Positions 27,430 through 59,340 of a DNA stretch of 64,000 bases are shown here, piece after piece. Source of the DNA: Scyliorhinus canicula (taxonomy: Eukaryota); the NCBI RefSeq assembly GCF_902713615.1, contig NC_052153.1:133713879-133777878 (forward strand), in the 5' to 3' direction. Each line of letters opens with the position of its first letter. Position 1 is the first letter of the stretch. Under the pieces are notes generated by a model. That model ran no database searches, had not been told where the DNA came from, and was given only the letters and a program-made list of their open reading frames with translations. The position numbers and the translations under genes were made by a program.

Positions 27430-28130
27430 TTTTTTAAATGTATTTTATTATAAACATGTATCAAAACAGGTTACAGCAAATAAATACCCCAAGAAACATA
27501 CTTCCCAGTAGTCAATTATACAGTCTGTATAGATTTCCCCCCTTTTTCACCCTCCCCCCCCCTCCTCCCTGTGACGAGCAGCTCCTCAAACGTGGTCACA
27601 AACATCTCCCAACCTTTCTCAAACCCCCCTGCAGAGCCCCTTAGCTCATACTTTATCATCTTCAACCGCAGGAAGTCGTACAAGTCACCCAATCAAGCCG
27701 TTAACCCCTGTAGCATGCCGACCGCCACTCCAGTAAAATTCGCCGCCGTACAATCAGAGAGGTGAAGGCCACAACATCGGCCTTCCTCCTCTCCGTGAGC
27801 TCCGGCTTCTCTGAAACCCCAAATATCTCCACCTCCTCCTCCACTATCCTGGCTAGGACCGTGAACACTCCCGCCCAAAATCTTCCCAATTTTTCGCAAT
27901 CCCAAAACATGTGCGCGTGATTTGCTGGCCCTCGCCCACATCTCTCACACTCATCTGCGACCCCCTGCAAGAATCCATTTGTTCTTGCCCGAGCCATATG
28001 CACCCTGTGCACCACCTTAAACTGTATCAGGCTCATCGTTGCACAAGAGGAAGTCCCGTTTACCCTACGCAGTGCCTCACTCTATACTCCCCAATTGATC
28101 TCCCCTCCCAACTCCACTTCCCATTTCTCC
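27430..28130 (-). mobile_element. 5'-truncated L1 3' fragment
   Basis: SLIQFKVVHRVHM...CERCGRGPANHAHMFWDC...FTSLIVRRRILL; AATAAA and A tail at ~27430-27448. Confidence 0.88.
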
Positions 28131-42861: not shown

Positions 42862-43439
42862 GTAAAATATTAGCGTGTAAAATTAAAACACATGGGATTG
42901 GGCATAGTGCATTGAGATGGATAGAAAACTGGTTGGCAGACATGAAATAAAGAGTCGGAATTAATGGGTCTTTTTCAAATTGACATGCACTGACTAGTGG
43001 GGTACGACAGGGTTTGGTGCTAGGACGCCAGCTATGCACAATGTATATTAATGATTTAGGTGAGGCAACAAAATGCAATATCTCCAAATTTGCAGATGAC
43101 ACCAAGTTGGGTGGGAGGGTGAGCTGTGAGGAGGATGCAGAGATTATTCAGCGTGATTTGGACAAGTTGAGTGAGTGGGCAAATGAATGGCAGATGCAGT
43201 GTAATTTGGATAAATGTGAGGTTATCCACTTTGGTAGCAAAAACAAGAAGGTAGAATATTATCTGAATGGCCATAAATTAGGAGAGGGGAATGTGCAACG
43301 AGAGCTGGGTGTCCTTGTACACCAGTCACTGAAGGTCAGCATACAGATGCAGCAGGCAGTAAAGAAGGCAAATGATATGTTGGCCTTCATTGCGAGGGCA
43401 TTTGAGTACAGAAGCAGGGATGTCTTGCTGCAATTATAC
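42862..43439 (+). mobile_element. CR1 RT fragment
   Basis: SGVRQG.VLG..L.TMYINDL...SKFADDTKLGG...KCEVIHFG. Confidence 0.9.
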
Positions 43440-44198
43440 ACCAATTCCAACCTACAACAGATCTCCCTCATGCCGTTCCGCGCCCTCTCCCCCTTCCACT
43501 GAGTGATGAGTGGATAACGGAATGGGCGGGGTGCAGGAAGAGAATGGGTGGGAAAGAAGGGAATGTGGGGCGGGTTTCTCCATCGGGATTCTCTGTTTCG
43601 CCAGCTGGTCAATGGGGTTTCCCATTGTGGAGAAGCCCCGTCGGCGGATAATTCAGCCTGAGGTCTCCGGCCTCCACACTGCATCATCAGCCTGGACCTT
43701 AGTGGGTATCCCTTATCCACCAGGAGCCAACCCGTCATCCTGGGATGGTCCTTGAAGATTCCAGGGATCTCCCAGTGTCCCAGGATGTAGCTGTCATGCA
43801 CGCTCCCTGGGTAGCGGGACACACAAGTGCATGATCCGGAGGTGTTGGTCGCACATTCAGGGATTGGAACCCCTTCTTCTTTTTTTTTTAAAATAATTTT
43901 TATTGAAATTTTTCGATACAAACATTTACCCCTACTACATTTTAAATTATAACACAACAAATCCCCCCTGGAAAATCCTCCCCACGCCCTCCCCCGTGCG
44001 CACCCCCCCACCCTTCCCCCCCCCCGCGCTACCAGTCTAGCAACCAAACCGTTTTTCCCTTCTGCCGATGGCCTCGGGCAGTCATTGCCCGCGACCCCCC
44101 GCTGACGTGCTCCCTTCGTTGCTATCCCCCCCCCCCTCCCTTCCCCCCCCCCCCCCCCCCCTTTCTCCCCGGGTTGCTGCTGTTTCGGCCTCCAGTTC

Positions 44199-47100
44199 CT
44201 ATCTCTGATCCAGAAAGTCAAGGAAGGGCTGCCACCGCCGGAAGAACCCCTGTACCGACCCTCTCAGGGCGAATTTGATTCTTTCCAATTGGATGAAGCT
44301 TGCCATGTCGTTTAACCAGGTGTTAACACTTGGTGGCCTTGTGTCCCTCCACTGAATCAAGATCCTTCTCCGAGCTACCAAGGACGCAAAGGCCAATATT
44401 CCGGCCTCCCCTGCCTCCTGTACTCCTGGCTCCACCCCAACCCCAAAAATCGCTAGCCCCCACCCTGGTTTGACCCTGGTTCCCACCACTCTCGATACCG
44501 TCCCCGCCACCCCCTCCCAGAACTCTTCCAGTGCCGGGCACATCCAGAACATATGTACATGGTTCGCAGGGCTTCCCGAACACCTAACACACCTGTCCTC
44601 ACCCCCGAAGAACCGACTCATCCTAGTCCCCGTCATATGGGCTCTGTGCAGCACCTTAAATTGGATGAGGCCCAACCTTGCGCACGACGACGACGAATTG
44701 ACCCTCTCTAAGGCATCCGCCCATGTCCCATCTTCTATCTGCTCTCCCAGCTCCGCTTCCCACTTGTCTTTCAGCTCCTCTATCGATACCTCCTCCACCT
44801 CCTGCATTATTTTGTAGATGTCCGAGACCTTCCCTTCTCCGACCCAGACCCCTGACAGCACCCTATCACTCACCCCTCTATCGGGAAGCAAGGGAAATCC
44901 TGCCACCTGTCGTCTGGCAAATGCCTTCACCTGCAGGTATCTAATCGTGTTCCCCGGGGGGAGCTCAAATTTCTCCTCCAGCTCTCCCAGGCTCGCAAAC
45001 CTCCCCTCTATGAACATGTCCCTCAGTTGCCTGATGCCCGCCCTGTGCCAGCTCTGGAATCCCCCGCCAGTGTTCCCCGGGACAAATCTGTGGTTCCCTC
45101 TCAGTGGCGCCGCCATCAGACCCCCCACTTCCCCCCTGTGTCGCCTCCACTGCCCCCAGATTTTCAGGGTGGCCGCCACTACCGGACTCATGGTATACCT
45201 TGTGGGGGGGAGCGGCCATGGTGCCGTTACTAGCGCCCCCAGGCTTGTATTGCCGCAGGACGCCCTCTCCATACGTTTCCAAGCTGCCCCCTCCCCCTCC
45301 ATCACCCACTTGCGCACCATCGATGCGTTCGCCGCCCAGTAGTATCCGGAAAGATTGGGTAGCGCTAATCCTCCCCTGTCCCTACTCCGTTCCAAGAAAA
45401 TCCTTCTCACTCTAGGGGTGCCATGTGCCCACACATAGCCCATAATGCTGCTAGTTACCTTCTTGAAGAAGGCCCTGGGGAGAAAGATGGGCAAGCACTG
45501 AAACAGAAACAAGAACCTCGGGAGGACCGTCATTTTGACTGACTGCACCCTCCCTGCTAGCGACAGCGGTACCATGTCCCACCTCTTGAACTCCTCCTCC
45601 ATCTGCTCCACCAGCCTTGAAAAGTTCAGCTTGTGGAGGGTCCCCCAGTTCCTTGCCACCTGCACCCCCAAGTACCTGAAGCTCTTTACTGCTCTCTTAA
45701 AGGGGAGCCGCCCAATTCCCTCCCCCTGATCTCCCGGGTGTATCACAAAGACCTCACTTTTACCCACATTTAATTTATATCCCGAAAAGTCCCCAAACTC
45801 CGCTAGTATTTCCATTACCTCCGGCATTCCCCCTTCCGGGTCCGCCACATATAACAACAAATCATCCGCATAGAGTGATACCCGATGTTCCTCCCCTCCC
45901 CTTGTCAGTCCTCTCCACCCCCCTGAACCCCTCAGTGCCATCGCCAACGGTTCGATCGCTAATGCAAATAGTAAGGGGGATAGGGGGCATCCCTGCCTGG
46001 TACCTCGATGGAGCCCAAAATACTCTGACCTCCTCCCGTTTGTAACCACACTCGCCATCGGGGCCGAATACAGCAGCTTCACCCACTTGATAAATCCCTC
46101 CCCAAACCCAAACCGTTCCAGCGTCTCCCACAGGTATTCCCACTCCACCCTATCGAATGCCTTCTCCGCATCCAGTGCTACCACTATCTCAGCCTCCCCC
46201 TCCACTGCTGGCATCATAATCACATTCAACAGTCTCCGGACATTTGTGTTAAGTTGTCGTCCCTTTACGAACCCCGTCTGGTCCTCATGGATTACCCCTG
46301 GCACACAATCCTCTATTCTGGTTGCCAGGACCTTTGCCAACAGTTTGGCATCTACATTCAAGAGGGAGATAGGCCTGTAGGACACGCACTGTACAGGGTC
46401 TTTGTCCCGCTTCAGGATCAAGGAGATCAGGGCCTGTGACATTGTCGGGGGCAGAACCCCCCCCTCTCGCGCCTCATTGAAGGCTCGCACCAGCACTGGA
46501 CCCACCAAGTCCACATACTTCTTATAAAATTCCACCGGGAACCCATCCGGCCCCGGCGCCTTCCCCGCCTGCATCTGGCCTATCCCTTTAACTAGCTCCT
46601 GCAGCTCTATCGGCGCCCCCAGCCCCTCCACCCGTTCCTCCTGGACCTTTGGGAACCTCAATCTATCGAGGAAGTTCTCCATTCCCCCCCTCCTCCTGGG
46701 CGGCTCAGACCGGTACAATTCCCTGTAGAAATCCCTGAAGACCCCGTTCACCTCTTGCCCCTTCTGCACTACGTTCCCTCCCTTCTCTCTCACTCCCCCA
46801 ATCTCTCTGGCTGCATCTCGCTTGCGCAGCTGGTGTGCTAGCATCCTGCTCGCCTTTTCCCCGTACTCATAGACCGCGCCCTGTGCCCTTCTCCATTGCG
46901 TCTCCGCCTTCCTAGTGGTCAGTAGGTCAAACTGGGCCTGTAAACTGCGCCGCTCCCTCAACAGCCCCTCCTCTGGTGTCTCCGCATATCTCCTGTCCAC
47001 TTCTATAAGTTCCCCCACCAGTCTCTCCCTCTCCTGTCTCTCCTTCCTTTCTCTGTGTGCCCTTATGGAGATCAGCTCTCCTCTGATCACTGCTTTCAGG

Positions 47101-48047
47101 GCCTCCCAGACTACCCCCACCTTCACCTCGCCCGTGTCGTTCGTGCCCAGATATCTCTCAATGCCCTTCCGGACCCTTCCGCACACCTCATCGTCCGCCA
47201 GCAGCCCCACATCCAGGCGCCACAACGGGCGCTGGTCCCGTGCTTCCCCCAGTTCTACCTCTACCCAGTGTGGTGCATGGTCCGAAATCGCAATGGCCGA
47301 GTACTCCGTGTCCTGCACTCTCGAAATCAGCCCCCTGCTCAGTACAAAAAAGTCTATTCTGGAGTACACCCTGTGGACGTGGGAGAAAAAAGAATACTCC
47401 CTCGCCATTGGCCTGCCAAATCTCCAAGGGTCTACCCCCCCCATCTGCTCCATGAACCCCCTTAGCACCTCTGCCGCTGCCGGCCTCCTATTCGTCCTGG
47501 AACTCGATCTGTCCAGCCCAGGGTCGAGCACTGTATTGAAGTCCCCCCCCATGATCAGGCCCCCTGCCTCCAGACCCGGAATGAGGCCCAACAGGCGCCT
47601 CATAAAACCCGCGTCATCCCAATTCGGGGCATACACATTCACCAGCACCACATTCTCTCCCTGCAGCCTACCCTTCACCATCACGTACCTACCCTCCTTA
47701 TCTGCTACCACCTGCGCCGCCACGAACGACACCCTCTTTCCCACCAAAATCGCCACCCCCCGGTTCTTTGCGTCCAAGCCTGAGTGGAACACCTGTCCCA
47801 CCCACCCCCTTCTCAGGCGTACCTGGTCTACTACTCTCAAGTGAGTCTCCTGCAACATTGCCACATCCGCCTGCAGTCCCTTTAGGTGTGAAAAAACCCT
47901 TGCTCTCTTGACCGGCCCATTCAGCCCCCTCACGTTCCAAGTAATCAACCGGGTCGCGGAGCGACCTGTCCCTTTCCCCTGTCTATTAGCCATGTCCTGT
48001 CCCCTGTTCGCCCCGGGTCGACCCTCCCCTTCTGACCCGTTCCCCAT
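44199..48047 (-). CDS. L1 ORF2p: APE endonuclease, reverse transcriptase, C-terminal CCHC
   Basis: TWNVRGL, LQETH, NVYAPN, GGDFN, SRIDFF, SDH; PGPDG, YRPISLLN.D.K, DAEKAFD, GTRQGCPLSP, YADD, YLG; C-x2-C-x7-H-x4-C-like knuckle. Alternative start at 47993 (MANRQ). Confidence 0.97.
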   Translation of the reverse strand: MGNGSEGEGRPGANRGQDMANRQGKGTGRSATRLITWNVRGLNGPVKRARVFSHLKGLQADVAMLQETHLRVVDQVRLRRGWVGQVFHSGLDAKNRGVAILVGKRVSFVAAQVVADKEGRYVMVKGRLQGENVVLVNVYAPNWDDAGFMRRLLGLIPGLEAGGLIMGGDFNTVLDPGLDRSSSRTNRRPAAAEVLRGFMEQMGGVDPWRFGRPMAREYSFFSHVHRVYSRIDFFVLSRGLISRVQDTEYSAIAISDHAPHWVEVELGEARDQRPLWRLDVGLLADDEVCGRVRKGIERYLGTNDTGEVKVGVVWEALKAVIRGELISIRAHRERKERQERERLVGELIEVDRRYAETPEEGLLRERRSLQAQFDLLTTRKAETQWRRAQGAVYEYGEKASRMLAHQLRKRDAAREIGGVREKGGNVVQKGQEVNGVFRDFYRELYRSEPPRRRGGMENFLDRLRFPKVQEERVEGLGAPIELQELVKGIGQMQAGKAPGPDGFPVEFYKKYVDLVGPVLVRAFNEAREGGVLPPTMSQALISLILKRDKDPVQCVSYRPISLLNVDAKLLAKVLATRIEDCVPGVIHEDQTGFVKGRQLNTNVRRLLNVIMMPAVEGEAEIVVALDAEKAFDRVEWEYLWETLERFGFGEGFIKWVKLLYSAPMASVVTNGRRSEYFGLHRGTRQGCPLSPLLFALAIEPLAMALRGSGGWRGLTRGGEEHRVSLYADDLLLYVADPEGGMPEVMEILAEFGDFSGYKLNVGKSEVFVIHPGDQGEGIGRLPFKRAVKSFRYLGVQVARNWGTLHKLNFSRLVEQMEEEFKRWDMVPLSLAGRVQSVKMTVLPRFLFLFQCLPIFLPRAFFKKVTSSIMGYVWAHGTPRVRRIFLERSRDRGGLALPNLSGYYWAANASMVRKWVMEGEGAAWKRMERASCGNTSLGALVTAPWPLPPTRYTMSPVVAATLKIWGQWRRHRGEVGGLMAAPLRGNHRFVPGNTGGGFQSWHRAGIRQLRDMFIEGRFASLGELEEKFELPPGNTIRYLQVKAFARRQVAGFPLLPDRGVSDRVLSGVWVGEGKVSDIYKIMQEVEEVSIEELKDKWEAELGEQIEDGTWADALERVNSSSSCARLGLIQFKVLHRAHMTGTRMSRFFGGEDRCVRCSGSPANHVHMFWMCPALEEFWEGVAGTVSRVVGTRVKPGWGLAIFGVGVEPGVQEAGEAGILAFASLVARRRILIQWRDTRPPSVNTWLNDMASFIQLERIKFALRGSVQGFFRRWQPFLDFLDQR

Positions 48048-48938
48048 GGCGATGCCCCCCCCCCCCTCTCTCCTCCCGTTCTTCCCTTCCCGTCCTCGGC
48101 CTTTCCAGCAGCAACCCGGTATCCCCCCCTAACCCCCCTTCCCCCCCCCCCCCCCCCTGGCTAGGACCCCTCCTAGCCGCGGTGTATCCACCATCGTACT
48201 CCCGAGAGTCAGCTGATTTTCGCTGACCCGGCTGCCCCTGCCACACTCCGACTCCTCCCGATGTGGGGGGGGAGGGGCCTCCCCCCCCCCTTGCCATCCC
48301 TCTCTGACCCCGCTTCAGCGCGGGAAAAGCCGCCATTGCTGGCCACACCCCACTCTTCTCTCCTCCCCCTTCCTCCGTCCCGCGCGCGGGAAACAGGGGA
48401 AAGCCCGCGCTTTCGCCCGGCCACACCCTACCCCGCCATCTTCAATTCCACCCCCGTCCCCATCCAAGCCCATAAAAAAGCCCCCTTAAAACGAGAGGAA
48501 GAAAAAAGAGAAAAAGAAAACACGCATAACCAACTTGCACCCCCCCCGTCCCGCCTCCCCAACTTAACAATATAACAATATAAATAACAAATCTCAAATA
48601 AATACATAAATACATAACTATGCCTGCATAACTAAATAACTACCCAATAATAACGTATTTAACCATCACCCTCCATCGAACAGAACAGTAACCATAACCC
48701 TTAAAGAACAGATCAAAAAACAGTAAAAAAGTCCCCCCTACAACAACAATAATTAAGGGAAGTTGGCAACGGGAAGAGACACACAAAAAGGAACAAAGAA
48801 ACCCCCCATAACACAAGTTTCAAAGAAACCAAACGATCCATCAACTTTAACCAAGTTCCGACCTGGCCTAAGAAAGACATGGGCCACTTGATCAGTCAAG
48901 GGTACTCGGGCGGCCTCGACCGCCGGCGTTCCCAAGTT

Positions 48939-49784
48939 CTAGTTCAGGTCCAGCTTTTCCTCCCGAACAAAAGTCCATGCCTCCTCTGGGGTCTCAAAGT
49001 AATGGTGCTGGTCCTTGTAGGTGACCCACAAGCGCGCTGGCTGCAGCATTCCGAACTTGATCCTCTTTGCGTGCAGCACCGCCTTCGTCCGGTTAAACCG
49101 GGCCCGCCGCTTTGCCACCTCCGCACTCCAGTCCTGATATATCCGCACCGTCGAATTCTCCCATTTGCTGCTTTTCTCCCTCTTGGCCCACCTCAGCACT
49201 TTCTCCCGATCACAGAAACGCTGGAATCGCACCAGCACCGCCCTCGGGGGCTCGTTCGCCCTAGGCCGCCTAGCCATGACCCGATATGCTTCTTCCAGCT
49301 CCAGAGGCGATGGACCGGCCCCCTCTCCCATCAGGGAGCTCAGCATCTCCGCTACATATTTCGGGAGATCAGGCCCCTCCAGGCCTTCTGCTAGGCCCAG
49401 GATCCTCAAGTTCTTCCGCCTCATTCGAGTGTCCAGCTCCTCAAAGCGGCTCTGCCATTTCAGGTGGAGTGCCTCGTGCACCTCCACCTTTCCCACGAGG
49501 ACCGTGGCCTCCTCCTCCCTTGCAGTCATCTCCTGCTCCAGCTCTCTTATCGACGCCTCTTGGGTCGCCTGGGCCCCCATCAGCCTTGTGGTCGTCGCGT
49601 TCATAGACTCTAAGAGTTCCACTTTCAGCTCCGTAAAACACCGGAGGAGAGCGGCCTGCTGCTCCTCCGCCCATTTTCTCCAATCTTCTAGTGCGCCACC
49701 GGCCGCCATTTTGGTCCTCTTCCCCCGCTTTTTTCGGGGAGCTGCTGCCGCTTTTTTTGTCGCCCCACTCCGAGTACCGACCAT
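48939..49784 (-). CDS. L1 ORF1p (coiled coil, RRM, CTD)
   Basis: RMRRKNLRILGLAEG, LEEAYR, PRAVLVRF, VRIYQDWS, PARLWVT. First ATG at 49784; the frame stays open upstream to at least 49895. Confidence 0.93.
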   Translation of the reverse strand: MVGTRSGATKKAAAAPRKKRGKRTKMAAGGALEDWRKWAEEQQAALLRCFTELKVELLESMNATTTRLMGAQATQEASIRELEQEMTAREEEATVLVGKVEVHEALHLKWQSRFEELDTRMRRKNLRILGLAEGLEGPDLPKYVAEMLSSLMGEGAGPSPLELEEAYRVMARRPRANEPPRAVLVRFQRFCDREKVLRWAKREKSSKWENSTVRIYQDWSAEVAKRRARFNRTKAVLHAKRIKFGMLQPARLWVTYKDQHHYFETPEEAWTFVREEKLDLN

Positions 49785-50899
49785 AAAGTTGGTCTCACTC
49801 TCCTCAGGGAGCCTTCCCCCACCGGGATTCGTCTTTACAGTACCGTCGGGGCCCTCCAATCGGCCCTTAAACACCTTTGTCGCAGGAGCTGCCAAATGTG
49901 CGACTTAGCTGGTCATAGCCGCAACCGGAAGTCCTGTTCAATGTTCTCGAACCCCTTCTTCTTAATCAAGAGCATTCCCTGATGGCCCAGCGCAAGCAAG
50001 CCAACATGCATGCCCCATAGTATATTGTCTCCTGGAACTGGGGCACCCGGCGATAGTGGAGAATCCTGCAGCCCTGGCATCTTGGTGGATCTGGCCCACA
50101 TCAAAGTTGATATAACCTGATGCCCGGGCACACAAGGCAGCCGTTACCTCACGGATGCACTTGTGGGCTGTAGCTTGGGAAATGCTGCACAAGTCCTTGT
50201 TCAATCCCTGGAATGATCCGGTTGCAGGGAAGTTCAGGGCTGCGGTAAACTTCAGCAGGCCACCAGGAGTGGGTGTCCTTCTCCTCCACGGGGTTGGAAG
50301 GATATCCCAGTGCTGAAGCCCAGCTCTTGAGTGTGTGATTGTTGGCTGCTGCCTCTTAGGTGCTCATGCTTCTGGAGTTCAGGCAAACTGTTCAGGCTTC
50401 AAAGTTTGATTGAAATGCGATGCAATAATCATCATTTGAGACATGGCAAGTGGACTCTTGAGAAGACACGTGAGAATATTTTGTTTATTAAACAGTCAAC
50501 AGTAACTAAGATTTGAAAACCAGCCATGCACCATTAGACACATCACACCAACCCAGCAAACAAGAAGGAAACATCAACACTCCACACTGGCATAATACAA
50601 AACTACAACAGTTTATCTTCTAAGAAAAACACACAGCATCACCCCTCGCCGGTTCCTCAACAGAAATGGAGGACAAGCCCGAGAGTGTGCCACCATGTCC
50701 AGAATCCTGTCGCAGAAAAGATCTGTCCATCAATGTGTGACATGTTCCACGTATCAATGCCATTCGCCATCCAGGAGCCGTAGTTGTGCAGGCCCTCCCA
50801 CATGGCCCAATCTCACCGGAACCAAATCCCAGCATCCACACACTCCACTGGTGCTCAAGGTGCAGCCTAACATGGTACCTGCCTAAACTGAAACCATCT

Positions 50900-58149: not shown

Positions 58150-59340
58150 ATGTAAATCTGAAATAAAAAAAACAGATCATCTCAGAAACACTCAGCAGGA
58201 CAGGCAGCAACTGTCAAGAGAGAAACAGAGTTAACTTTCCACGTCAAAAACTATTTTTCAGACTGGAAGATGTTTGAGGTATAACAGGTTTTGAGCCAAT
58301 ACAGGGACAGACAAAATGGAAAGGGATGAAAGCAGGAGGAATGTTTATGAAAGGTAGGAGCGAATAACTGACAAAAGAGAGGATGTTGTGAGGTAAAATG
58401 GATGTTAATGAGACAAGTAAAGACACAAAAGCTGACCTAGAGGAGTTGTGAATCGCAATAGCAAGATTGTTGCTAACCACCTATTATCTGAAAAAAAATA
58501 GGAGCAGTGGTTATGATCTGAAATTGTTGAACTCAGTGTTGAACCTAAAAGACTGTAAAATACCTATTTGAGAGATGTGGTAGCAGTCCTTGAGCTTCCA
58601 TTAAGCTTCACTAGAATGATATAGAAGGCTGAGGACAGAAAGTTTAGGTTGAAAGAGGCCGGTGTTCTGGCCTTTGCGTCCCTAGTAGCTCGGCGGAGGA
58701 TCTTGCTTCAATGGAAGGATGCGAGGCCCCCAAGCGTGGAGGCCTGGATCAATGATATGGCGGGGTTCATCAAATTGGAGAAGGTGAAATTTGCCCTGAG
58801 GGGATCAGTACAGGGGTTCTTTAGGCGGTGGCAGCCTTTCCTGGACTTCCTGGCGGAAAGGTAGGGAAATAGGCTGGCAGCAGCAGCAACCCAGGGGAGG
58901 GGGGGGGGGGGGGGGGGTTTGGTTCGGTGGGAGGGAGATCTGTGTACAAGGGTTGTGGGATGTGGCGGGTGTTATCTCTTTCCCTTTTGTTGTTTGGATT
59001 TTTTTTTCTTTTGTTTGCAGTTGCTTTTGTAGTTGGATGGGTGTTGTTCTTGGGTTTTTACCATGGTTGTTTTGTTAATATTGTTTTGTTGTTTATATTT
59101 TGTGAAAATCTTAATAAAAATTATTTAAAAAAAAAGAAAGTTTAGGTTGGATGGAGAATTAAATGACAAGTGACTGGAAGCTCAGGGTCATGCTTGCTGG
59201 CTAAACAAAGCTGTCCAGCAAATATGGCACCCAAGCAATGATTTGTCTCCTTATTATGGATATGAGCATCAAACACAGTACAGTATGTTAAAAGTACAGG
59301 TAAATTGTTATTTCACATGTAAGGCATATTAAGGATCTTG
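58150..59340 (-). mobile_element. Old Penelope-like 3' fragment interrupted by an L1
   Basis: AATCTGAAATAAAA..CTCAGCAGG.CAGGCAGCA.CTGT..AGAGAAACAGAGTTAAC resembles 22540-22630. Confidence 0.6.
58652..59134 (+). mobile_element. Young 5'-truncated L1
   Basis: C-terminus nearly identical to ORF2 above (LAFASLVARRRIL...FFRRWQPFLDFL); TSD AGAAAGTTTAGGTTG 58637-58651 / 59135-59149; AATAAA and A tail. Confidence 0.93.

What the first reader, a model, noticed from the sequence alone, without database searches (positions are those of the whole stretch)
44169..48119. ORF2 is clamped by a long-range inverted repeat with a symmetric GAAA/GAAA loop: candidate undescribed L1 RNA panhandle
Seen: on the L1 sense strand the spacer before ORF2 reads CCGGGUUGCUGCUG-GAAA-GGCC (48119-48098), and the 3' UTR starting 9 nt after the stop reads GGCC-GAAA-CAGCAGCAACCCGG (44190-44169). 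These form 14 perfect base pairs, a 4x4 GAAA/GAAA internal loop and 4 more pairs, enclosing the ~3.9-kb ORF2. Both arms abut poly-G tracts. The related L1 at 58652 keeps CAGCAGCAACCC just after its stop although the rest of its 3' UTR differs. Inference: the helix would bring the ORF2 stop and 3' end next to the ORF2 start, which could support ORF2 (re)initiation across a ~900-nt spacer, ribosome recycling, or cis-preference, analogous to viral 5'-3' long-range pairings. I know of no such description for L1 but cannot search the literature.
Basis: partly seen in the sequence, partly recalled or inferred. Interest (0 to 1): 0.78.

Follow-up and report, generated by a model that had tools for sequence, protein, structure and literature searches.

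The report
Shark L1 ORF2 bracketed by complementary arms
A young, intact L1 jumping gene in a shark genome carries two short sequences, one just before and one just after its reverse-transcriptase gene, that could pair in the RNA and close that gene into a loop. The match is real and unlikely to be chance, but whether it is conserved or does anything could not be tested here.

Summary
Observation confirmed. On the L1 sense (minus) strand, 48119-48098 and 44190-44169 form 14 perfect pairs, a GAAA/GAAA 4x4 loop and 4 more pairs. They lie 50 nt before the ORF2 ATG and 8 nt after its stop.

For the pairing:
- It appears in the full-length minimum-energy fold. The two arms are each other's best partner in the whole element.
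- The leader/3'UTR interaction energy is -43.8 kcal/mol, against -13.4±4.5 for shuffles (0/150).
- The 3' arm core (CAGCAG..AGCAACCC + G-run) is a conserved island in two sister subfamilies.

Against, or limiting:
- A 14-nt inverted repeat somewhere in the element occurs in 6% of shuffles.
- Seven distant fish L1s (about 41-47% ORF2 identity where measured) show no such bracket.
- The closest relative with a spacer (71% aa) lacks the 5' arm.
- No sister copy with both arms could be fetched, so covariation is untested.

New here:
- The 3' arm has a second strong partner inside ORF2 (46062-46084).
- The G-tracts beside the arms are direct repeats, not inverted.

Best reading (about 40%): a lineage-specific long-range RNA duplex, function unproven. 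Another reader noted the same bracket on another piece of this genome (s1-249249).

The parts
43882..49948 (-). Full-length L1 element: 5'UTR, ORF1, 891-nt spacer, ORF2, 317-nt 3'UTR with a short poly(A)
   Evidence: Pfam Exo_endo_phos and RVT_1 in ORF2. ORF1 is homologous to ORF1 of other L1 loci by tblastn. Boundaries read.
49949..49963 (-). Target-site duplication, 5' copy (15 nt)
   Evidence: Identical 15-mer at both ends.
43867..43881 (-). Target-site duplication, 3' copy (15 nt), directly after the poly(A)
48939..49895 (-). ORF1 open frame. No Pfam hit, but related to ORF1 of fish L1 loci.
48048..48938 (-). ORF1-ORF2 spacer, 891 nt. The 5' half is T-rich and the 3' part G-rich. It holds 16 ATG triplets.
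   Evidence: In public runs, contig depth over most of the spacer (48280-48879) is about 5-20-fold lower than over the ORFs.
48120..48157 (-). G-tract immediately 5' of the 5' arm. It is a direct repeat of the 3'UTR G-tract.
   Evidence: Self-BLAST, 38 nt at 89% identity. Sequence.
48098..48119 (-). 5' arm: 14-mer + GAAA + GGCC
48048..48097 (-). Purine-rich ORF2 leader between the 5' arm and the ATG. In the minimum-energy fold it pairs weakly with the CT-rich last 50 nt of ORF2.
44199..48047 (-). ORF2, 1282 aa, intact (APE endonuclease + reverse transcriptase)
46062..46084 (-). ORF2-internal site in the RT domain (peptide WVKLLYSA). It is complementary to the 5' two-thirds of the 3' arm, with a 1-nt bulge. 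This pairing excludes the 5'-arm pairing.
   Evidence: Duplex -34.4 kcal/mol; none of 200 permuted arms finds a partner that good, best -31.3.
44169..44190 (-). 3' arm: GGCC + GAAA + 14-mer, starting at the 9th nt after the ORF2 stop
   Evidence: Core conserved in two sister subfamilies.
44123..44159 (-). G-tract 9 nt 3' of the 3' arm. It is a direct repeat of 48120-48157.
58655..59138 (+). 5'-truncated sister L1, 78% nucleotide identity. It has its own target duplication and keeps the 3' arm core with one change (G to A after ACCC).

Best explanation
The two arms are a lineage-specific long-range RNA-RNA interaction in the transcript of this young shark L1 family.

The start of the 3'UTR is a CAG-rich, unusually C-containing island in an otherwise G-rich, C-poor RNA. 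It pairs with a site 51-72 nt upstream of the ORF2 ATG. This closes the 3.9-kb ORF2 into a loop. It also sets the ORF2 stop codon and the 3'UTR G-tract beside the purine-rich ORF2 leader and its own G-tract.

The same 3' island can instead pair with a coding site in the RT domain, so two mutually exclusive conformations are possible.

The most likely role is control of ORF2 expression:
- The 891-nt spacer with 16 AUGs makes scanning or reinitiation from ORF1 improbable.
- A helix that ties the ORF2 landing region to the place where ORF2 ribosomes terminate could hand ribosomes back to the ORF2 start, or shut that start off.
- A terminating ribosome would cover the first pairs of the helix and melt it.

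Shown: the complementarity, its energy, its exclusivity within the element, the local accessibility of both arms, and conservation of the 3' island. Inferred: that the helix forms in cells, that it is selected, and everything about function.
For: - Exact 14+4 bp helix with a symmetric GAAA/GAAA loop. The arms alone cofold at -38.3 kcal/mol, and exactly these pairs appear in the 6.1-kb minimum-energy fold.
- Forbidding the 3' arm from pairing costs 13.5 kcal/mol.
- Leader x ORF2-end/3'UTR interaction is -43.8 against -13.4±4.5 kcal/mol in shuffles, z -6.7, 0/150. The helix score is beaten by 0/100 shuffles.
- Each arm's best partner over the whole element is the other arm.
- Both arms lie in sequence that folds locally no better than shuffles, with unpaired centroids.
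- The loop and the flanking G-tracts keep the same strand sense on both sides. An inverted DNA duplication would not give that.
- The 3' island is conserved in sister subfamilies, while the 13-16 nt between it and the stop are not.
- The family is high-copy in all 20 listed runs that hold the stretch, from 8 studies of one organism.
Against: - No covariation evidence. No sister copy with both arms was obtainable.
- A 14-nt inverted repeat occurs somewhere in 6% of shuffled elements, and the positional restriction is post hoc.
- The closest relative with a spacer (L001, 71% aa at the ORF2 N-terminus) has nothing like the 5' arm.
- Seven distant fish L1s show no significant bracket. One of them has its own 10-bp bracket at similar positions, but its 68%-aa relative has not kept it.
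- Most of the spacer upstream of the 5' arm is the least shared part of the family in public runs; the 200-nt bin that holds the arm is intermediate.
- The helix has no G-U pairs, so it does not tell which strand matters.
- Translating ribosomes and ORF1p coating would oppose a 3.9-kb-range helix in vivo.
Confidence: 0.4

Rival explanations
1. Historical by-product. The three related short motifs are the 5' arm, the ORF2-internal site and the reverse complement of the 3' arm. On this reading they descend from short copy or template-switch events during the frequent remodelling of L1 spacers and UTRs. The complementarity is then a neutral relic in a young family that has had no time to decay.
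For: - All three share a GGGT..GCTGCTG..GGCC layout.
- The element is very young: perfect 15-nt target duplication and intact ORFs. Perfect pairing therefore needs no selection.
- The 5' arm is missing from the 71%-aa relative L001.
- The spacer is highly variable in the family, with several indel joints.
Against: - No homology extends beyond 14-16 nt around any motif.
- No known mechanism places 20-nt inverted copies 2-4 kb apart.
- 18 of 18 stem positions match, while all 4 loop positions differ from what an inverted copy would give, yet are identical on the RNA strand.
- The 3' island is older than this family.
Confidence: 0.27
2. Pure coincidence, helped by low complexity. CAG/CTG triplets pair with each other, and a G-rich RNA pairs readily with any C-containing stretch. 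The coincidence was picked out of a very large scan.
For: - An inverted repeat of 14 nt or more occurs in 19/300 shuffles of the element.
- GCTGCTG occurs three times and CAGCAGC twice in the element.
- The plain duplex-energy test over 150-nt windows did not separate the real sequence from shuffles, 68/200.
- The scan covers some 250,000 windows.
Against: - Position-restricted tests give 0/100 and 0/150.
- Permuted arms never find a partner as good as either real partner, 0/200.
- Two separate extensions of the shared CAGCAGC core, one toward each partner, would both have to be accidents.
- The 3' island is conserved.
Confidence: 0.15
3. Replication-side role or side effect. The helix brings two directly repeated G-tracts together at its base. 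A reverse transcriptase copying from the 3' end could then jump across the stem and skip ORF2. That would produce the ORF1-only 'half-L1' elements that other readers report in this genome.
For: - Direct-repeat G-tracts flank the outer ends of both arms.
- One public-run contig joins 44029 to 48140, a G-rich part of the 3'UTR to the spacer G-tract (table 5c, depth 19).
- Four first-stage notes describe 1.8-3.3 kb ORF1-only elements (three of 1.83-1.87 kb) in this genome. These notes are unchecked.
Against: - The predicted product, about 1.96-2.07 kb, is longer than three of the four reported sizes (1.83-1.87 kb; the fourth note spans 3.28 kb).
- The single joint may be an assembly artefact across G-runs.
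- Spacer depth is low, so abundant half-L1s cannot carry this spacer.
- None of those elements could be read here.
Confidence: 0.1
4. A double-stranded DNA motif bound by a host or element factor in either orientation, for example for an internal promoter or for silencing, rather than an RNA structure.
For: - The same motif layout occurs three times, twice on one strand and once on the other.
- Another reader thought the spacer looks like an internal promoter (s1-213930, unchecked).
- GTTGCT/AGCAAC hexamers recur in the 3'UTR.
Against: - No known binding site was identified.
- One copy lies in conserved coding sequence, where its letters are explained by the protein.
- The placement flanking ORF2 is not explained.
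Confidence: 0.08

Closest known systems
Flavivirus genome cyclization sequences (5'CS/UAR with 3'CS/UAR)
   Same: Short (about 10-20 nt) complementary stretches kilobases apart in one positive-sense RNA. They close the coding region into a loop and act as a switch between translation and copying of the RNA by a polymerase that starts at the 3' end (from general knowledge of the family).
   Different: The viral elements lie near the true RNA ends and enclose the whole polyprotein. They are conserved with covariation across species and are experimentally required. Here the 5' arm is internal, after ORF1 and most of the spacer. Conservation is shown for one arm only, and nothing is tested functionally.
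Long-distance 3'UTR-to-leader base pairing of plant-virus cap-independent translation elements, and tombusvirus long-range readthrough/frameshift elements
   Same: A 3'UTR element pairs with a leader upstream of a translated ORF to deliver or regulate ribosomes. In the readthrough/frameshift cases a helix begins 6-9 nt after the recoding site. Here the 3' arm begins 8 nt after the ORF2 stop.
   Different: Those interactions are usually 5-8 nt loop-loop contacts between folded elements. Here it is a linear 14+4 bp duplex. The partner of the post-stop arm lies upstream, not downstream. No extended read-through product of evident function exists.
Fish and other vertebrate L1 intergenic regions and proposed ORF2 IRES or reinitiation (Boissinot and Sookdeo 2016, PMC5381506)
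   Same: Long, T-rich ORF1-ORF2 spacers are typical of fish L1. ORF2 translation is thought to need an unconventional mechanism close to the ORF2 start.
   Different: That study folded the spacers alone and found no shared secondary-structure pattern. Spacer-to-3'UTR pairing does not come up in the passages retrieved. It also describes G-rich 3'UTR tracts as essentially mammalian, whereas this shark L1 has them.
Mammalian L1 3'UTR G-rich polypurine tract (G-quadruplex)
   Same: A G-tract at the start of the 3'UTR, also seen here in three to four shark L1 subfamilies.
   Different: Here a second, directly repeated G-tract sits before ORF2, and the helix would juxtapose the two. No G4 test was done.

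Membership tests
L1 (LINE-1) clade non-LTR retrotransposon | ORF2 with an N-terminal APE-type endonuclease and a reverse transcriptase | tested here: met
   Pfam Exo_endo_phos (E 9e-16) and RVT_1 (E 2.5e-39). 41-47% identity to teleost proteins named LINE-1 reverse transcriptase.
L1 (LINE-1) clade non-LTR retrotransposon | Upstream ORF1, poly(A) tail and target-site duplication | tested here: met
   ORF1 is homologous to ORF1 of other L1 loci. Poly(A) and a perfect 15-nt duplication.
Conserved long-range RNA cyclization/panhandle element | Complementary arms far apart in one RNA that are thermodynamically favoured over alternatives | tested here: met
Conserved long-range RNA cyclization/panhandle element | Both arms conserved in relatives, with compensatory changes | tested here: inconclusive
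   The 3' arm core is kept, with 1-2 changes, in two sister subfamilies. Their 5' arms were not obtainable: one copy is truncated, the other is cut by the locus edge. L001 (71% aa) lacks the 5' arm. Seven distant L1s have no bracket.
Conserved long-range RNA cyclization/panhandle element | Pairing demonstrated in the RNA and required for function | not testable with these tools
   The public runs are held as contigs only, so there are no probing or ligation data.
DNA-level inverted duplication (foldback or terminal-inverted-repeat type) | Reverse complementarity runs through the whole duplicated block, including interruptions and flanks | tested here: not met
   The 4-nt interruption is GAAA on the same strand in both arms. 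The flanking G-tracts are direct, not inverted, repeats. No extended homology.
Known Rfam RNA family | Match at the gathering threshold | tested here: not met
   No Rfam 15 family matches anywhere in the window.

The most novel reading that the evidence does not exclude
A retrotransposon-encoded long-range RNA switch. The first 30 nt of the L1 3'UTR pair alternately with the ORF2 leader, closing all of ORF2, or with a site in the RT-coding region. The first conformation sets two G-quadruplex-prone direct repeats side by side. The switch would gate ORF2 translation against reverse transcription. By letting the reverse transcriptase jump across the stem base, it would also spawn the ORF1-only half-L1 elements seen in this genome.
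Probability: 0.15. Interest if true: 0.75.

Novelty: new variant of a known kind. Interest (0 to 1): 0.45.

Why it matters
How L1 ORF2 gets translated from a bicistronic RNA is a long-standing open question, and it is sharper in fish-type L1s with spacers of 600-1300 nt. How the RNA is then handed from ribosomes to its own reverse transcriptase is equally open.

Long-range RNA pairing solves similar problems in many RNA viruses. The full-text searches here found no such description for L1. A shark L1 family with a strong, specific pairing at the ORF2 boundaries would give a concrete, mutable element to test. It is high-copy, intact and probably active.

If the pairing turns out to be an accident of one young family, the finding is a curiosity only.

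Tried and rejected
1. Finding close relatives.
   - Exact-protein look-ups of ORF2 and ORF1 found nothing.
   - Word search with the whole ORF2 gave only relatives of 47% or less.
   - The N-terminal piece gave L001 at 71%, which has a spacer but no 3' end.
   - The C-terminal piece gave nothing.
   - The exhaustive representative search gave one 77% fragment. Its locus, L079, holds two sister copies. Both lack the ORF2-internal site through internal deletions. One is cut by the locus edge 2.6 kb short of its 5' arm.
2. Metagenome scans. The protein scan found no relative. The 19-nt 3'-island pattern gave 14 hits, none in L1 context, so they are chance.
3. Read laying. It shows a high-copy family and a poorly shared spacer. 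Only 40 of 1107 variant rows are printed, none of them in the arms, so conservation of the arms within the family could not be measured.
4. RNAduplex over 150-nt windows is dominated by G-rich spurious pairing and did not discriminate. It was replaced by a helix score and by cofold interaction energy.
5. A general L1 'bracket' is rejected.
   - Five of eight distant loci show nothing.
   - Two show only a polypyrimidine tract before ORF2 against a polypurine tract in the 3'UTR.
   - One has its own 10-bp pair, which its relative has not kept.

6. A local 3'UTR hairpin as the reason for conservation of the 3' island. The 3'UTRs of the three subfamilies fold no better than shuffles, and the arm is unpaired in the centroid.
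7. The genome-contig scan returned about 50 L1-like contigs in bacterial assemblies at about 33% identity. I take them for host contamination, very likely human and mouse. I did not compare, search or use them.
Full report
**What is there**

The finding lies in a full-length L1 retrotransposon on the minus strand, 49948-43882. It is bounded by a perfect 15-nt target-site duplication (49963-49949 and 43881-43867) and ends in a short poly(A). It inserted into a gene of a Harbinger-type DNA transposon; the downstream flank hits DDE_Tnp_4.

ORF2 (48047-44199, 1282 aa) is intact and carries the APE endonuclease and reverse-transcriptase domains. Its nearest database relatives are teleost L1 ORF2 proteins at 47% identity or less. 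ORF1 (open frame 49895-48939) matches the ORF1 of other L1 loci. An 891-nt spacer with 16 ATG triplets lies between the ORFs. The sense strand is G-rich and C-poor throughout: 36-44% G and 12-22% C.

**The observation**

- The 5' arm is 48119-48098 and ends 50 nt before the ORF2 ATG.
- The 3' arm is 44190-44169 and starts at the 9th nt after the stop.
- Together they give 14 perfect Watson-Crick pairs, a symmetric GAAA/GAAA 4x4 loop and four more pairs.
- G-tracts abut both arms.
- The 5'-truncated sister L1 at 58655-59138 keeps the 12-nt core followed by a G-run.

**Is it more than chance?**

The evidence is mixed, and I report both sides.

Against significance:
- Anywhere in the element, a perfect inverted repeat of 14 nt or more turns up in 19 of 300 dinucleotide shuffles. 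The 14-mer alone is unremarkable.
- The restriction to the two ORF2 boundaries, used in the tests below, was chosen after the fact.

For significance:
- Restricted to the 150 nt before the ATG and the 150 nt after the stop, no shuffle approaches it. The longest match is 14 against a mean of 6.3 and a maximum of 9. The helix score is 38 against 23.6±3.2, 0/100.
- The cofold interaction energy of the leader with the ORF2 end and 3'UTR start is -43.8 kcal/mol, against -13.4±4.5 for shuffles (0/150, z -6.7).
- Scanning each arm against the whole element, the other arm is the best partner (-39.8 and -40.5 kcal/mol). Two hundred permutations of either arm never reach that.

Allowing for the post hoc choice and for the size of the scan, I judge pure chance unlikely, about 15%, but not excluded.

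**Would it form?**

- The arms alone cofold at -38.3 kcal/mol.
- The minimum-energy fold of the whole 6.1-kb RNA contains exactly these pairs.
- Forbidding the 3' arm from pairing costs 13.5 kcal/mol.
- Both arms lie in stretches that fold locally no better than shuffles (z +1.1 and +1.0), with unpaired centroids. They would therefore be free for a distant partner.
- The fold extends the contact a little inward, where the purine-rich leader pairs with the CT-rich last 50 nt of ORF2. It also extends outward, where the G-tracts pair with the T-rich half of the spacer. These extensions add only about 5 kcal/mol and are compositional.

1. The two G-tracts (48157-48120 and 44159-44123) are direct repeats of each other, 38 nt at 89% identity. 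The GAAA interruptions are also direct. The layout is therefore G-tract, stem, GAAA, stem ... stem, GAAA, stem, G-tract. Only the stems are reverse-complementary. A DNA-level inverted duplication would give TTTC and C-tracts. This pattern is what strand-specific constraint on an RNA would produce. GGCC is its own reverse complement, so that part of the match is cheap.

2. The 3' arm has a second strong partner inside ORF2, at 46062-46084, in the RT domain (peptide WVKLLYSA). This site is complementary to the 5' two-thirds of the arm with a 1-nt bulge. The duplex is -34.4 kcal/mol, and the best of 200 permuted arms reaches -31.3.
   - The two partners share the CAGCAGC core of the arm, so they exclude each other.
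   - No homology extends beyond 14-16 nt around any of the three motifs.
   - The codons at the ORF2 site are the commonest ones for this ORF, so they carry no separate signal.

**Comparative evidence**

Close relatives were very hard to reach. Three 3' ends could be compared: this element, the sister at 58.8 kb (78% nucleotide identity), and copy A in L079. L079 comes from a 406-Mb chromosome of assembly GCA_047496885.1, and copy A is about 71% identical.
- In all three, the 13-16 nt after the stop differ. A CAG-repeat followed by AGCAACCC and a G-run is kept.
- There are two variable positions: C to T in the fourth place, and G, A or T after ACCC.
- The 3' arm core is thus a conserved island that predates this family.
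- Its 5' part (GGCC-GAAA) is specific to this element's lineage.

The matching 5' arms could not be seen. The sister in the window is truncated. L079 copy A runs off the locus edge. Both L079 copies have internal deletions that remove the ORF2-internal site.

The closest relative with a spacer is L001, from a JGI metagenome. It is 71% identical over the best-matching stretch of the ORF2 N-terminal query. Nothing in its 413-nt spacer resembles the 5' arm.

Seven to eight distant fish L1s with both flanks were tested for an analogous bracket.
- None is significant by interaction energy.
- Two related elements (L018, L077) only oppose a polypyrimidine tract before ORF2 to a polypurine tract in the 3'UTR.
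- One (L021) has its own 10-bp pair about 90 nt before the ATG and 9 nt after the stop (2/100 shuffles). Its 68%-aa relative L076 has not kept it.

The bracket is therefore not a general L1 feature. At best it is specific to a shark lineage.

**Family context from public runs**

Twenty of the 24 listed runs, from 8 studies of one coded organism, hold 69-75% of the element's sampled words.

Laid contigs show the following:
- The family is very high in copy number.
- Most of the spacer (48280-48879) has about 5-20-fold lower summed depth than the ORFs.
- The spacer has several indel variants.
- One low-depth contig joins 44029 to 48140, that is, a G-rich part of the 3'UTR to the spacer G-tract with ORF2 missing.
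- No variant in either arm is among the 40 printed rows. Another 1067 rows are hidden, so this says little.
- All runs are contigs, so neither transcription nor RNA ends can be judged.

**Literature**

Full-text searches found no description of a long-range or panhandle pairing in L1 or other non-LTR elements. Boissinot and Sookdeo (PMC5381506) describe long, T-rich spacers in fish L1. They found no shared structure when the spacers were folded alone, and pairing between spacer and 3'UTR does not come up in the passages I retrieved. Rfam has no match in the window.

**Interpretation**

I commit, at about 40%, to a real, lineage-specific long-range RNA duplex. It would close ORF2 into a loop and tie the ORF2 landing region to the place where ORF2 ribosomes terminate.
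- The 16 AUGs in the spacer argue against scanning from ORF1, so some local recruitment at the purine-rich leader is needed.
- A helix that starts 8 nt after the stop would be opened by every terminating ribosome. That suits a switch or a hand-back of ribosomes to the ORF2 start.
- The second partner inside ORF2 suggests two alternative conformations.
- All of this is inference. Only complementarity, energetics, accessibility and one-sided conservation are shown.

Rivals:
- A neutral relic of short copy events in a very young family (about 27%).
- Coincidence helped by CAG/CTG low complexity (about 15%).
- A replication-side effect, in which the stem lets the reverse transcriptase jump between the juxtaposed G-tract repeats and generate ORF1-only half-L1s (about 10%). 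This is compatible with the main reading.
- A DNA motif bound in either orientation (about 8%).

**Earlier notes of this scan**

- Another first-stage reader reported inverted-complementary 13-14 nt motifs bracketing L1 ORF2 on another piece of the same genome (s1-249249). This shows that the feature is not private to this copy. Copies of one young family are not independent evidence, and I could not read that stretch.
- Notes on ORF1-only half-L1 elements and on a purine-rich element before ORF2 (s1-203733) gave leads that I could not test.

**Limits and restraint**

The L1-like contigs found in bacterial genome assemblies are, in my judgement, host contamination, very likely human and mouse. 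I left them unused.

Noticed in passing
window 46062-46084 (-): An ORF2-internal coding site (WVKLLYSA, RT domain) is complementary to the 5' two-thirds of the 3' arm with one bulged base. The duplex is -34.4 kcal/mol, better than any of 200 permuted arms finds anywhere in the element.
   Followed up: partly
window 48120-48157 and 44123-44159 (-): The G-tracts next to the two arms are direct repeats of each other (38 nt, 89%). Both end in GGGGATA. The helix would put them side by side, so a two-part G-quadruplex or a template jump is conceivable.
   Followed up: partly
window 43259-43866 and 49964-50200 (-): The L1 sits inside a Harbinger/PIF-type transposase gene (DDE_Tnp_4 hit in the downstream flank). 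An open frame runs from the L1 3'UTR across the poly(A) into that gene only because G-rich sequence lacks stop codons.
   Followed up: partly
window 58640-59151 (+): A 5'-truncated sister L1 (last 69 codons of ORF2 plus a different, T-rich 3'UTR) has its own target-site duplication (GAAAGTTTAGGTTG).
   Followed up: partly
window 14965-18726 and 27460-28129: Further, much more divergent L1-like fragments (32-55% aa to this ORF2, 34% to ORF1). The one ending near 27580 (-) also has a G-rich tract right after the end of ORF2.
   Followed up: no
L079:2-2750 and L079:6735-8960: Two sister L1 copies lie on a 406-Mb chromosome of assembly GCA_047496885.1. Both have internal ORF2 deletions that overlap: the equivalents of aa 578-823 and aa 649-853. 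The second also lost the ORF2 end and the 3' arm at a TCTTG microhomology.
   Followed up: partly
L021:1444-1474 and L021:5369-5398: A distant L1 (47% aa) on a TARA metagenome scaffold has its own 10-bp perfect pairing (GGACAGAACC with GGTTCTGTCC). It lies about 90 nt before the ORF2 ATG and 9 nt after the stop, so the geometry is similar but the sequence unrelated. Its 68%-aa relative L076 does not have it.
   Followed up: partly
L018 and L077, upstream of ORF2 and in the 3'UTR: In one teleost L1 lineage a polypyrimidine tract just before ORF2 is complementary to a polypurine tract 80-150 nt into the 3'UTR. This complementarity comes from base composition, not a specific helix.
   Followed up: partly
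window 44029 / 48140 (table 5c): One low-depth public-run contig joins a G-rich part of the 3'UTR directly to the spacer G-tract with ORF2 absent. It is either an ORF1-only derivative or an assembly artefact across G-runs.
   Followed up: no
loci L026-L075: About 50 L1-like contigs sit in assemblies labelled as bacteria or archaea, at about 33% aa identity to this ORF2. They are most likely host contamination, human and mouse. I did not examine them further, on purpose.
   Followed up: no
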